A stretch of 64,000 nt of DNA from Octopus sinensis (lineage: Eukaryota), in assembly GCF_006345805.1 (NCBI RefSeq), contig NC_042999.1, forward strand, positions 141,794,001-141,858,000, read 5' to 3'. The notes below the pieces were generated by a model. That model was given only the letters and a program-made list of their open reading frames with translations, made no database searches and was not told the DNA's origin. A program made the position numbers and the translations under genes. This document shows, piece by piece, positions 562-646 of the stretch; position 1 is the first letter of the stretch; each line of letters opens with the position of its first letter.

Positions 562-646
562 AGGATTCTCATCGAAAGCAGGTTGTTATTGATTCCGAGA
601 CTTGCCTGTTGGACATTCTGGACACAGCTGGTCAGGAAGAATACAG
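562..646 (+). CDS. Ras: Ras GTPase, alternative exon 2A (E37-S65; [29 protein letters not shown])
   Basis: Acceptor ttgcatttcag, donor AG|gttggt, 85 nt, phase 1 to phase 2. Contains the DTAGQEEY G3 motif. Y40H and G48S relative to canonical Ras. Confidence 0.85.

What the first reader, a model, noticed from the sequence alone, without database searches (positions are those of the whole stretch)
562..646. Exon 2A encodes a natural effector-loop variant (Y40H, G48S): a possible effector-switching Ras isoform
Seen: CAT (His) at codon 40 and TCC (Ser) at codon 48, while D57, G60 and Q61 are intact. Established: Tyr40 lies in the core effector region and is conserved across Ras subfamily members; engineered Y40C loses Raf and RalGDS binding but keeps PI3K signalling. 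Residues 47-49 form the beta2-beta3 turn implicated in membrane orientation. Inference: splicing may toggle MAPK versus PI3K output, for example in neurons. These are genomic codons, and A-to-I editing cannot convert them to Tyr or Gly.
Basis: partly seen in the sequence, partly recalled or inferred. Interest (0 to 1): 0.8.

Follow-up and report, generated by a model that had tools for sequence, protein, structure and literature searches.

The report
Octopus Ras alternative effector-loop exon
The octopus Ras gene carries two tandem copies of one small exon, and the upstream copy makes a conserved, transcribed Ras isoform with changed residues (His40, Ser48) on the surface human KRAS uses to bind the RAF kinase; its function is untested.

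Summary
Window 562-646 is an 85-nt exon with AG/GT splice sites. It encodes Ras residues 37-65 with His40 (CAT, 570-572) and Ser48 (TCC, 594-596). A second 85-nt copy lies 55 nt downstream (702-786) and encodes Tyr40, Gly48 and Asp49.

The window is the single classical Ras gene of Octopus. Both isoforms are already RefSeq models (H40: XP_014774294.1, XP_029633501.1). I found no paper describing them.

The H40/S48/E49 isoform is assembled from RNA-seq of the cuttlefish Sepia and of a second decapodiform. Between Octopus and Sepia, exon 2A has 12 synonymous and 0 amino-acid changes, so it is a functional coding exon dating at least to the coleoid ancestor.

Including both exons, or neither, breaks the reading frame. 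The 55-nt spacer probably blocks splicing of one copy to the other.

In human KRAS, Tyr40 tolerates only Phe for RAF1 binding, and Gly48 contacts the RAF1 cysteine-rich domain. Altered RAF engagement is therefore the best guess. A MAPK-versus-PI3K toggle in neurons is untested.

Two surprises:
- Limpets (Patella) and a ribbon worm (Lineus) carry protein-silent tandem copies of the same exon.
- Exon 2B is 84/85 nt identical between Octopus and Sepia.

The parts
541..561 (+). 3' splice region of exon 2A. The polypyrimidine tract is interrupted and weaker (tttgatatctttgcatttcag).
   Evidence: Compare the uninterrupted pyrimidine run upstream of exon 2B.
562..646 (+). Exon 2A, 85 nt, covering Ras codons 37 (last 2 nt) to 65 (first 2 nt). 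It encodes [28 protein letters not shown].
   Evidence: for the translation; exact match to XP_014774294.1 and XP_029633501.1; the same peptide in Sepia and a second decapodiform; dN 0, dS about 1-1.5.
570..572 (+). Codon 40, CAT = His (Tyr in exon 2B and in 318 of 320 retrieved Ras sequences).
594..599 (+). Codons 48-49, TCC GAG = Ser-Glu (Gly-Asp in exon 2B; Gly-Glu in other animals).
   Evidence: A Ser TCN codon needs two base changes from Gly GGN.
647..701 (+). 55-nt spacer intron between the two copies. It has the 5' splice site GTTGGT, a candidate branch site TTAAT at 678-682 and a strong polypyrimidine tract.
   Evidence: That the spacer is too short to be spliced is an inference from its length.
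702..786 (+). Exon 2B, 85 nt, encoding [28 protein letters not shown]. It is probably the default copy.
   Evidence: It is 84/85 nt identical to Sepia (dS 0.06).
787..793 (+). 5' splice site of exon 2B, GTTGGTT, identical to that of exon 2A (647-653) and non-consensus.
   Evidence: direct repeat D1: 550-653 / 690-793.
21491..21593 (+). Ras exon encoding residues 65-99 ([35 protein letters not shown]).
22864..22903 (+). Ras exon encoding residues 100-112 (IKRVKDADEVPMV).
30426..30586 (+). Ras exon encoding residues 113-166, including the NKVD and SAK motifs.
34398..34457 (+). Last coding exon: polybasic tail and CAAX box (KEKKGKNKKKRRRFPCVLL*).
34531..34622 (+). Conserved block in the 3' UTR, 89% identical to the Sepia transcript.

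Best explanation
**What it is.** Exon 2A is the upstream member of a tandemly duplicated, mutually exclusive exon pair in the single classical Ras gene of Octopus. The duplicated unit is 140 bp. Each mature mRNA carries exactly one copy.

**How exclusivity is enforced.**
- Each exon is 85 nt, not a multiple of three. Including both, or neither, shifts the frame into early stop codons. This is shown.
- The 55-nt spacer leaves only about 34 nt between the 2A donor and the likely branch point. That is probably too little for the two copies to be spliced to each other. This is inferred.

**Which copy is used when.** Exon 2B has the stronger polypyrimidine tract and is the form most often assembled from RNA-seq, so it looks like the default. 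Exon 2A looks like the regulated minor form.

**What the isoform does.** Choosing 2A yields a Ras protein identical to the default except for His40, Ser48 and Glu49. The default has Tyr40, Gly48 and Asp49. These three residues have been held fixed at least since octopods and decapodiforms split. All three lie on the face that human Ras uses for RAF: residue 40 meets the Ras-binding domain, residue 48 meets the cysteine-rich domain, and residues 48-49 are in switch III. The most likely function is therefore a splice-selected Ras with weakened or re-tuned RAF engagement and altered effector balance. Nucleotide binding, GEF/GAP handling and membrane anchoring should be unchanged. The direction and size of the effector change are inferred, not shown.
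For: **Anatomy.**
- Two 85-nt exons with AG/GT boundaries, the same phase and the same 5' splice site, separated by a 55-nt spacer.
- In-silico double inclusion or skipping gives premature stops.

**Identity.**
- Both 185-aa isoforms are exact database matches. Y40 is XP_014774293.1 (O. bimaculoides); XP_029633500.1 and an Argonauta hians entry are listed for the same sequence.
- H40 is XP_014774294.1 (O. bimaculoides); XP_029633501.1 and an O. sinensis UniRef entry are listed for the same sequence.
- Both match the Pfam Ras family at about 204 bits. Human KRAS4B is the best PDB match.

**Expression and conservation.**
- Four Logan RNA-seq contigs from four runs encode the H40/S48/E49 isoform in full. 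They represent two distinct coding sequences, hence at least two species. Of 15 contigs on record for the Y40 isoform I read 10, plus L001.
- Runs SRR1386223, SRR19578112 and SRR3186475x are Sepia esculenta.

**Selection.**
- Octopus versus Sepia exon 2A: 12 synonymous and 0 non-synonymous differences. The rest of the gene has dS about 1.04 and dN 0.018.

**Rarity.**
- 318 of 320 retrieved Ras sequences have Tyr40. The only two with His are the coleoid isoforms, and the same two are the only ones with Ser48.

**Residue function.**
- KRAS Y40 'can only be replaced by F' for RAF1 binding, through a cation-pi contact with R89 (PMC10866706).
- The RAF1 cysteine-rich domain contacts KRAS R41-G48 (PMC7895934).
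- G48R, E49K and D47A/E49A in switch III change nanoclustering and effector recruitment (PMC4563131).
- In KRAS, Y40H has no significant effect on folding (ddG 0.06 kcal/mol), while G48S costs 0.51 kcal/mol and E49D 0.31.

**Spacer length.**
- Tandem copies in Patella and Lineus also have 48- and 51-nt spacers.
Against: - No binding, signalling or tissue data exist for either isoform.
- The residue-function evidence comes from human KRAS and HRAS with human effectors. Cephalopod RAF was not examined and could have co-evolved.
- Limpets and a ribbon worm keep protein-silent tandem copies of the same exon. The tandem arrangement can therefore persist without any protein difference.
- Direct transcript evidence for 2A use in Octopus itself is limited to RefSeq models. 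No Logan contig encoding either full-length Octopus isoform was on record.
- The steric argument rests on intron-length limits known from vertebrates and flies. A 64-nt gap separates the exon 2 and exon 3 matches in Capitella, so an intron only slightly longer than the spacer is probably spliced there. The limit in cephalopods is unknown.
- dS estimates on 27 codons are noisy.
Confidence: 0.6

Rival explanations
1. The H40 isoform behaves like engineered Ras Y40C: it loses RAF and RalGDS binding but keeps PI3K. Exon choice would then toggle MAPK against PI3K output, for example in neurons.
For: - Position 40 is the residue defining the classical Y40C partial-loss-of-function mutant (established knowledge).
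- Y40 substitutions other than Phe abolish RAF1 binding in KRAS.
- The isoform is conserved and transcribed.
Against: - The same scan reports that many Y40 substitutions strongly inhibit RAF1, PIK3CG and RALGDS binding together.
- His is not Cys.
- No per-effector value for Y40H could be retrieved, because the binding tables were cut in the stored supplement.
Confidence: 0.15
2. The pair is kept for an RNA-level or gene-expression reason, such as robust exon definition, or regulated unproductive splicing by double inclusion. The three amino-acid differences would be functionally near-neutral passengers.
For: - Patella vulgata, P. caerulea and Lineus longissimus keep tandem copies encoding identical peptides, with similarly short spacers.
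- Lineus has also duplicated the 49-nt P-loop exon.
- Exon 2B shows extreme synonymous conservation between Octopus and Sepia (1/85 differences, Fisher P = 0.0004 against the other exons). This points to constraint at the RNA level.
Against: - If residues 40, 48 and 49 were neutral, they should have drifted or reverted along three lineages separated by dS of about 1. Instead both exons have dN = 0 and the three differences are fixed.
- Tyr40 is otherwise invariant.
- Ser48 (TCN) needs two base changes from Gly, which suggests a directional change.
- No significant local RNA structure was predicted.
Confidence: 0.15
3. The H40/S48 isoform is matched to a co-evolved partner: a cephalopod RAF variant or another Ras-association-domain protein. 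It would then signal normally, or through a lineage-specific effector, rather than being RAF-impaired.
For: - Two separate RAF-contact positions (40 for the Ras-binding domain, 48 for the cysteine-rich domain) changed together and stayed fixed. That pattern is what a re-matched interface would show.
Against: No cephalopod effector sequence was examined here. RAF Ras-binding domains, including the Arg89 equivalent, are generally conserved (memory, not tested).
Confidence: 0.08
4. Exon 2A is a decaying pseudo-exon, or an annotation or assembly artefact.
For: None beyond its absence from the cluster representatives in the first protein searches. That absence is explained by clustering at 90% identity.
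Against: - The reading frame and splice sites are intact.
- Full-length RNA-derived contigs exist from four runs, representing at least two species.
- There were no amino-acid changes over a divergence with dS of about 1.
Confidence: 0.01

Closest known systems
KRAS4A / KRAS4B (vertebrate KRAS alternative fourth exons)
   Same: Homologous exons derived by duplication are used alternatively in a classical Ras gene. They are conserved for hundreds of millions of years, and one isoform dominates (PMC9882654; PMC8373072).
   Different: KRAS 4A/4B changes helix alpha5 and the membrane-targeting tail, not the effector face. The octopus pair changes residue 40 of the core effector loop and the beta2-beta3 turn, and leaves the tail untouched. 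The origin is independent and lies in a different lineage.
Rab6A / Rab6A' (duplicated exon in human RAB6A; from memory)
   Same: A tandemly duplicated internal exon of a small GTPase is spliced in a mutually exclusive way. The two isoforms differ by three residues near a switch region and are reported to differ in effector use.
   Different: It belongs to a different GTPase family and a different exon. This comparison rests on my recollection; the one paper my search returned was not read.
Engineered effector-loop mutants: Ras Y40C and Rac1 Y40H
   Same: The same structural position is substituted to separate effector pathways. Rac1 G12V/Y40H is used as an effector-selective mutant (PMC4610213).
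   Different: Those are laboratory mutations. Here the substitution is natural, splice-selected, coupled to G48S, and conserved. No paper on Ras Y40H was found.
Ras switch III variants (H-Ras G48R, N-Ras E49K, H-Ras D47A/E49A)
   Same: Positions 48 and 49 of the beta2-beta3 loop are changed. Those mutations alter nanoclustering and effector recruitment without changing RBD binding in vitro (PMC4563131).
   Different: Those are rare tumour or designed mutations to Arg, Lys or Ala. The octopus exons carry Ser48/Glu49 against Gly48/Asp49, whose effects are unmeasured apart from mild folding costs in KRAS.
Steric-hindrance mutually exclusive exons (alpha-tropomyosin exons 2/3; from memory)
   Same: Two adjacent alternative exons are separated by an intron too short between donor and branch point to be spliced together.
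   Different: For the octopus pair the block is inferred from a 55-nt spacer only. The branch point is unmapped and cephalopod limits are unknown. The frame constraint (85 nt) gives a second, independent safeguard.

Membership tests
Classical Ras subfamily (H/K/N-Ras, Ras85D, LET-60 orthologue) | Ras-family G domain | tested here: met
   Pfam PF00071 scores 203.9 bits (H40 isoform) and 204.9 bits (Y40 isoform). The best PDB matches are KRAS4B, E about 4e-102.
Classical Ras subfamily (H/K/N-Ras, Ras85D, LET-60 orthologue) | G3 DTAGQE, G4 NKxD and G5 SAK motifs | tested here: met
   DTAGQEE is present in both exon 2A and exon 2B. NKVD and ETSAK are in the exon at 30426-30586.
Classical Ras subfamily (H/K/N-Ras, Ras85D, LET-60 orthologue) | Invariant core effector loop YDPTIEDSY (residues 32-40) | tested here: not met
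   This holds for exon 2B (Tyr40) but not for exon 2A (His40). Of 320 retrieved Ras sequences, 318 have Tyr40. The gene is a classical Ras; the 2A isoform departs from the family signature at this one residue.
Classical Ras subfamily (H/K/N-Ras, Ras85D, LET-60 orthologue) | C-terminal CAAX box with polybasic or palmitoylated hypervariable region | tested here: met
   KEKKGKNKKKRRRFPCVLL* at 34398-34457. This is a KRAS4B-like polybasic tail.
Classical Ras subfamily (H/K/N-Ras, Ras85D, LET-60 orthologue) | P-loop GAGGVGKS | not testable with these tools
   The upstream exons lie outside the window. The P-loop is present in the database proteins that match the reconstructed isoforms exactly.
Tandem-duplicated mutually exclusive exons | Adjacent homologous exons of equal length and phase with their own splice sites | tested here: met
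   Exons at 562-646 and 702-786 are both 85 nt, 81% identical, with AG/GT boundaries.
Tandem-duplicated mutually exclusive exons | Mature transcripts contain exactly one copy | tested here: met
   All 15 full-length RNA-seq contigs from Sepia and a second decapodiform carry one copy: 4 with 2A and 11 with 2B. The RefSeq X1/X2 models agree. Because contigs were retrieved by exact protein, aberrant forms would not have been seen.
Tandem-duplicated mutually exclusive exons | Including both or neither is non-productive | tested here: met
   Both cases shift the frame into premature stop codons.
Steric-hindrance type of mutual exclusion | Donor-to-branch-point distance below the spliceosome's minimum | tested here: inconclusive
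   The spacer is 55 nt and the candidate branch site TTAAT at 678-682 leaves about 34 nt. Spacers of 48 and 51 nt occur in Patella and Lineus. The branch point is not mapped and the minimum for cephalopods is not known.
Docking-site / selector RNA-structure type of mutual exclusion (Dscam-like) | Conserved competing base-pairing between a docking site and selector sequences | tested here: inconclusive
   Local folds are not better than shuffles (z from -0.98 to +0.32). The 311-nt region gives z = -2.15. No second genomic sequence was available for covariation.
Y40C-type effector-selective Ras (RAF and RalGDS lost, PI3K kept) | Differential binding to RAF, RalGDS and PI3K | not testable with these tools
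   Only indirect literature evidence from human KRAS is available.

The most novel reading that the evidence does not exclude
Coleoid cephalopods turned a protein-silent tandem exon pair into a splice-selectable Ras. Such pairs arise repeatedly, or persist, in lophotrochozoan Ras genes. In the coleoid version the two RAF-contact points (residue 40 for the Ras-binding domain, residue 48 for the cysteine-rich domain) were both rewritten. This would give a natural Ras isoform that is uncoupled from, or re-matched to, RAF. Cells could then change the wiring of the Ras pathway by exon choice. The near-total synonymous conservation of the default exon 2B would be the RNA-level control element for that choice.
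Probability: 0.3. Interest if true: 0.85.

Novelty: new variant of a known kind. Interest (0 to 1): 0.66.

Why it matters
Tyr40 was invariant in all the other Ras sequences I retrieved (318 of 320). It is also the textbook position for separating Ras effector pathways in the laboratory.

A natural Ras isoform that replaces Tyr40 and the neighbouring RAF-CRD/switch III contact would be an evolutionary experiment in re-wiring the central growth-signalling switch. This one is chosen by splicing and has been conserved since before octopuses and cuttlefish diverged. It offers a ready-made pair of proteins for asking what residues 40, 48 and 49 contribute in vivo.

The protein-silent tandem copies in limpets and a ribbon worm show the likely starting state of such an innovation. 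A duplicated exon whose length is not a multiple of three, followed by a spacer too short to splice, would be mutually exclusive from birth. It would therefore be harmless, and free to diverge later.

If the two proteins prove biochemically equivalent, the finding reduces to an ordinary duplicated alternative exon.

Tried and rejected
- **Protein searches for other His40 Ras proteins.** Queries of 130, 44 and 85 aa were used. None showed His40, because the database lists one representative per 90%-identity cluster and returns hits of query-like length. The isoforms only appeared by exact look-up.
- **Tissue of origin.** I could not identify the tissue for the runs in which the H40 isoform was assembled (SRR8281662, SRR8281691, SRR9970004, SRR27666078). 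No paper cites them.
- **Outgroup loci.** Look-ups for the chiton Liolophura, for Nucella and for Mya failed, because only the longest product per gene is indexed.
- **Octopus genomic DNA from the two assemblies.** It was not returned, because the gene spans more than 100 kb. Intron conservation therefore could not be examined.
- **RNA structure as an explanation for exon choice or for exon 2B conservation.** Folds of the exons with their flanks are not better than shuffles. Rfam finds nothing in the window.
- **Alternative promoter coupled to exon choice.** The 2A and 2B transcripts of Sepia share the 3' UTR exactly. In an ungapped comparison their 5' UTRs show mismatch counts in the same range for both isoforms, so this crude test gave no sign of coupling.
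- **Per-effector binding energies for Y40H and G48S.** The stored supplement of the KRAS scan is cut after part of the folding table.
- **Pseudo-exon or artefact.** Rejected.
- **High-level A-to-I recoding of Tyr40 (TAC to TGC, Cys) in exon 2B.** All 11 RNA-derived Sepia-type contigs carrying exon 2B read TAC, so there is no sign of majority editing there.
- **Structure prediction.** Not run. A monomer model would not inform effector binding.

Full report
**Observation.**

Window 562-646 is an 85-nt exon with a 3' splice site (tttgcatttcag|AG) and a 5' splice site (CAG|gttggt). It is read in phase with the last two bases of codon 37. It encodes [28 protein letters not shown] plus the first two bases of Ser65.
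- Codon 40 is CAT (570-572).
- Codon 48 is TCC (594-596).
- D57, G60 and Q61 are intact.

Fifty-five bases downstream, at 702-786, lies a second 85-nt exon. It has the same phase and the same 5' splice site (GTTGGTT). It is 69/85 nt identical to the first and encodes [28 protein letters not shown]. The repeat finder reports the pair as a 104-nt direct repeat with a 140-nt period.

The two copies differ at three residues, not two: H/Y40, S/G48 and E/D49. The remaining differences are 10 synonymous codon changes.

**The gene.**

tblastn with human HRAS finds the rest of the reading frame in the window:
- residues 65-99 at 21491-21593;
- residues 100-112 at 22864-22903;
- residues 113-166 at 30426-30586;
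- a polybasic CAAX tail (KEKKGKNKKKRRRFPCVLL*) at 34398-34457.

The upstream exons (residues 1-36) lie outside the window. I added the conserved lophotrochozoan N-terminus and looked both reconstructed 185-aa isoforms up by exact sequence. Both are in the collection.
- The Y40 form is XP_014774293.1 (O. bimaculoides). XP_029633500.1 and an Argonauta hians entry are listed for the same sequence.
- The H40 form is XP_014774294.1 (O. bimaculoides 'GTPase HRas isoform X2'). XP_029633501.1 and the O. sinensis entry UniRef100_A0A6P7S5T1 are listed for the same sequence.

So the window is Octopus, and the isoform is already a database model. Both isoforms match Pfam Ras at about 204 bits and human KRAS4B best among solved structures. 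Four literature searches found no paper describing this exon pair or a Ras Y40H variant. A survey of RAS gene evolution does not mention molluscs or cephalopods (PMC9882654).

**Expression and conservation.**

The same 90% cluster holds two Logan RNA-seq proteins from other cephalopods. P0244 has Y40/G48/D49 and P0245 has H40/S48/E49. They share a C-terminal half that differs from Octopus at five residues.
- P0245 is encoded in full by four contigs from four runs. P0244 has 15 contigs on record, of which 10 were read; L001 carries the same coding sequence with a longer called ORF.
- Runs SRR1386223, SRR19578112 and the SRR3186475x series are Sepia esculenta (PMC6906322, PMC10141105, PMC11917092).
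- One H40 contig (L005, SRR27666078) differs from the Sepia coding sequence at 27 of 473 positions outside exon 2. It therefore comes from a second decapodiform.
- Every contig carries exactly one of the two exons.

Selection on the two exons, Octopus against Sepia:
- Exon 2A has 12 synonymous and 0 non-synonymous differences (dS about 1.5).
- The rest of the gene has dS about 1.04 and dN 0.018.

Exon 2A is therefore a translated, selectively maintained exon. His40, Ser48 and Glu49 have been fixed at least since the octopod-decapodiform split. I recall that split as roughly 250-300 million years old; this is from memory.

Among 320 Ras sequences retrieved in the three searches, 318 have Tyr40. 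The only two with His are these coleoid isoforms, and the same two are the only ones with Ser48. The Ser codon (TCC or TCT) needs two base changes from any Gly codon.

**How exclusivity works.**

Shown: an 85-nt exon is not a multiple of three. Including both exons, or neither, runs into stop codons within the next exon.

Inferred: the 55-nt spacer has a candidate branch site (TTAAT, 678-682) about 34 nt from the 2A donor. That is shorter than the minimum distances known for vertebrate and fly spliceosomes (established knowledge, alpha-tropomyosin exons 2/3). The two copies probably cannot be joined.

Splice signals:
- Exon 2B is preceded by an uninterrupted pyrimidine run. The tract before exon 2A is interrupted.
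- Both keep the same non-consensus donor, GTTGGT.
- Together with the contig counts (4 with 2A, 11 with 2B among those read), this suggests 2B is the default and 2A the regulated form.
- In an ungapped comparison the 5' UTRs of the 2A and 2B transcripts show similar mismatch counts. This crude test gave no sign of promoter coupling.

**What the isoform probably does.**

- In the deep mutational scan of human KRAS, Y40 'can only be replaced by F' for RAF1 binding, because of a cation-pi contact with RAF1 R89. Many Y40 substitutions strongly inhibit RAF1, PIK3CG and RALGDS binding together (PMC10866706).
- The same study's folding energies show no significant effect of Y40H (0.06 kcal/mol). G48S costs 0.51 and E49D 0.31 kcal/mol. 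The 2A protein should therefore fold.
- The KRAS-RAF1(RBD-CRD) structure shows that the cysteine-rich domain contacts KRAS R41-G48 and helix alpha5 (PMC7895934).
- The beta2-beta3 loop is 'switch III'. There, D47A/E49A, G48R and E49K raise nanoclustering and effector recruitment without changing RBD binding in vitro (PMC4563131).

All three isoform-specific residues thus sit on the RAF-facing, membrane-orientation face of Ras. My best explanation is a splice-selected Ras with weakened or re-tuned RAF engagement.

The KRAS data do not single out PI3K as spared. Cephalopod effectors were not examined, so a co-evolved partner remains possible.

**An unexpected context.**

I fetched the Ras locus from outgroups.
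- *Patella vulgata and P. caerulea:* each carries two tandem 85-nt copies of this exon, 48 nt apart and 82-83/85 identical. Both copies encode the canonical peptide.
- *Lineus longissimus (a ribbon worm):* also two copies, 51 nt apart and 80/85 identical, again protein-silent. Its 49-nt P-loop exon is duplicated as well, with a 43-nt spacer. RefSeq lists four accessions, carrying at least two different isoform labels, with one identical protein. That would fit two-by-two exon choice.
- *Capitella and Solemya:* one copy each.
- *Saccostrea (an oyster):* one full copy, followed by an array of roughly 48-nt partial copies of the exon's 3' end plus donor site.

Tandem duplication of this exon with a spacer of about 50 nt is therefore recurrent or ancient in Lophotrochozoa, and it is usually silent. 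Only in coleoids have the copies diverged in protein.

A simple reading is survivorship. A duplicated exon of non-triplet length in an essential gene is tolerated only if the copies cannot both be included, and a very short spacer provides that at birth. This supports the steric model. It also shows that persistence of the pair does not by itself prove a protein-level function, which keeps the RNA-level rival alive.

**Unexplained.**

Exon 2B is 84/85 nt identical between Octopus and Sepia (dS 0.06). By contrast:
- exon 2A differs at 12 of 85 positions;
- the other exons differ at 49 of 364;
- Fisher P is 0.0004 against the other exons and 0.002 against exon 2A.

Across phyla the canonical exon is only 66-76/85 identical, so this constraint is coleoid-specific. 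Local RNA folds are not significant, and Rfam finds nothing. Candidates are a dense exonic splicing code, long-range pairing, or the constraint reported around conserved A-to-I editing sites in coleoids (from memory). All Sepia RNA contigs read TAC at codon 40, so majority editing to Cys is not seen.

**Verdict.**

- The interpretation as an effector-face variant is well founded on residue positions. Biochemically it is untested, and the specific MAPK/PI3K/neuron story is speculation.
- The isoform is already in RefSeq but appears undescribed in the searched literature.
- I class it as a new variant of a known kind (tandem-duplicated, mutually exclusive exon in a small GTPase, compare KRAS4A/4B). 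Its interest is above average because it touches an otherwise invariant effector residue.

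Noticed in passing
window 702-786: Exon 2B is 84/85 nt identical between Octopus and Sepia (dS 0.06). Exon 2A and all other exons of the same gene have dS of about 1. This is strong, unexplained selection on synonymous sites of the default exon.
   Followed up: partly
L016 13502-13719; L017 12737-12954: Patella vulgata and P. caerulea carry two tandem 85-nt copies of the same Ras exon, 48 nt apart. The copies are 82-83/85 identical and encode the same canonical peptide, so this duplicated alternative exon is silent at the protein level.
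   Followed up: partly
L019 9000-9140 and 10587-10807: The ribbon worm Lineus longissimus has two different Ras exons duplicated in tandem. They are the 49-nt P-loop exon (43-nt spacer) and the 85-nt exon (51-nt spacer). All copies are protein-silent. RefSeq lists four accessions, with at least two isoform labels, for one identical protein.
   Followed up: partly
L018 8515-8900: In the oyster Saccostrea echinata, the single Ras exon is followed by an array of roughly 48-nt degenerate partial copies of its 3' end plus the donor site (..[11 protein letters not shown]|gt..). These could act as decoy donor sites or reflect slippage.
   Followed up: no
P0007 versus P0246 (Mya arenaria): Mya arenaria RefSeq isoform X3 differs from X1/X2 only by H27L (LIQNLF versus LIQNHF), at an exon junction. 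This may be another duplicated-exon choice, in this case one that changes the protein. Mytilus californianus also has X1/X2 labels on one identical protein.
   Followed up: no
window 508-531 and 1605-1628: A 24-nt inverted repeat, 92% complementary, brackets the whole exon 2A/2B pair. It is AT-rich and may be chance, but it could loop out both exons.
   Followed up: no
window 647-653 and 787-793: Both alternative exons keep an identical non-consensus donor, GTTGGTT. The constitutive exons of the gene use GTAAGT or GTAAAA. The internal CAG|GTTGT at codons 43-44 of both exons resembles the real donor.
   Followed up: no
window 27438-28514 (-) and 31371-32774 (+): Reverse-transcriptase ORFs (Pfam RVT_1) lie in the Ras introns; the plus-strand ORF also has a weak PHD-finger match below Pfam's cut-off. 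They indicate retroelement insertions and account for part of the very long introns.
   Followed up: partly
window 49642-50277 (+): A 211-aa ORF downstream of Ras has a CG-1 DNA-binding domain (Pfam PF03859, E = 3.8e-9). It may be an exon of a CAMTA-like gene or a fragment.
   Followed up: no
window 34531-34622: A 92-nt block of the Ras 3' UTR is 89% identical to the Sepia transcript. That is more conserved than the coding exons at synonymous sites, and it may be a regulatory element.
   Followed up: no
L001, L006, L015 coding positions 69, 351, 450: Three of the five differences among the Sepia RNA-derived contigs are A/G and are silent. They could be polymorphisms or RNA editing.
   Followed up: no
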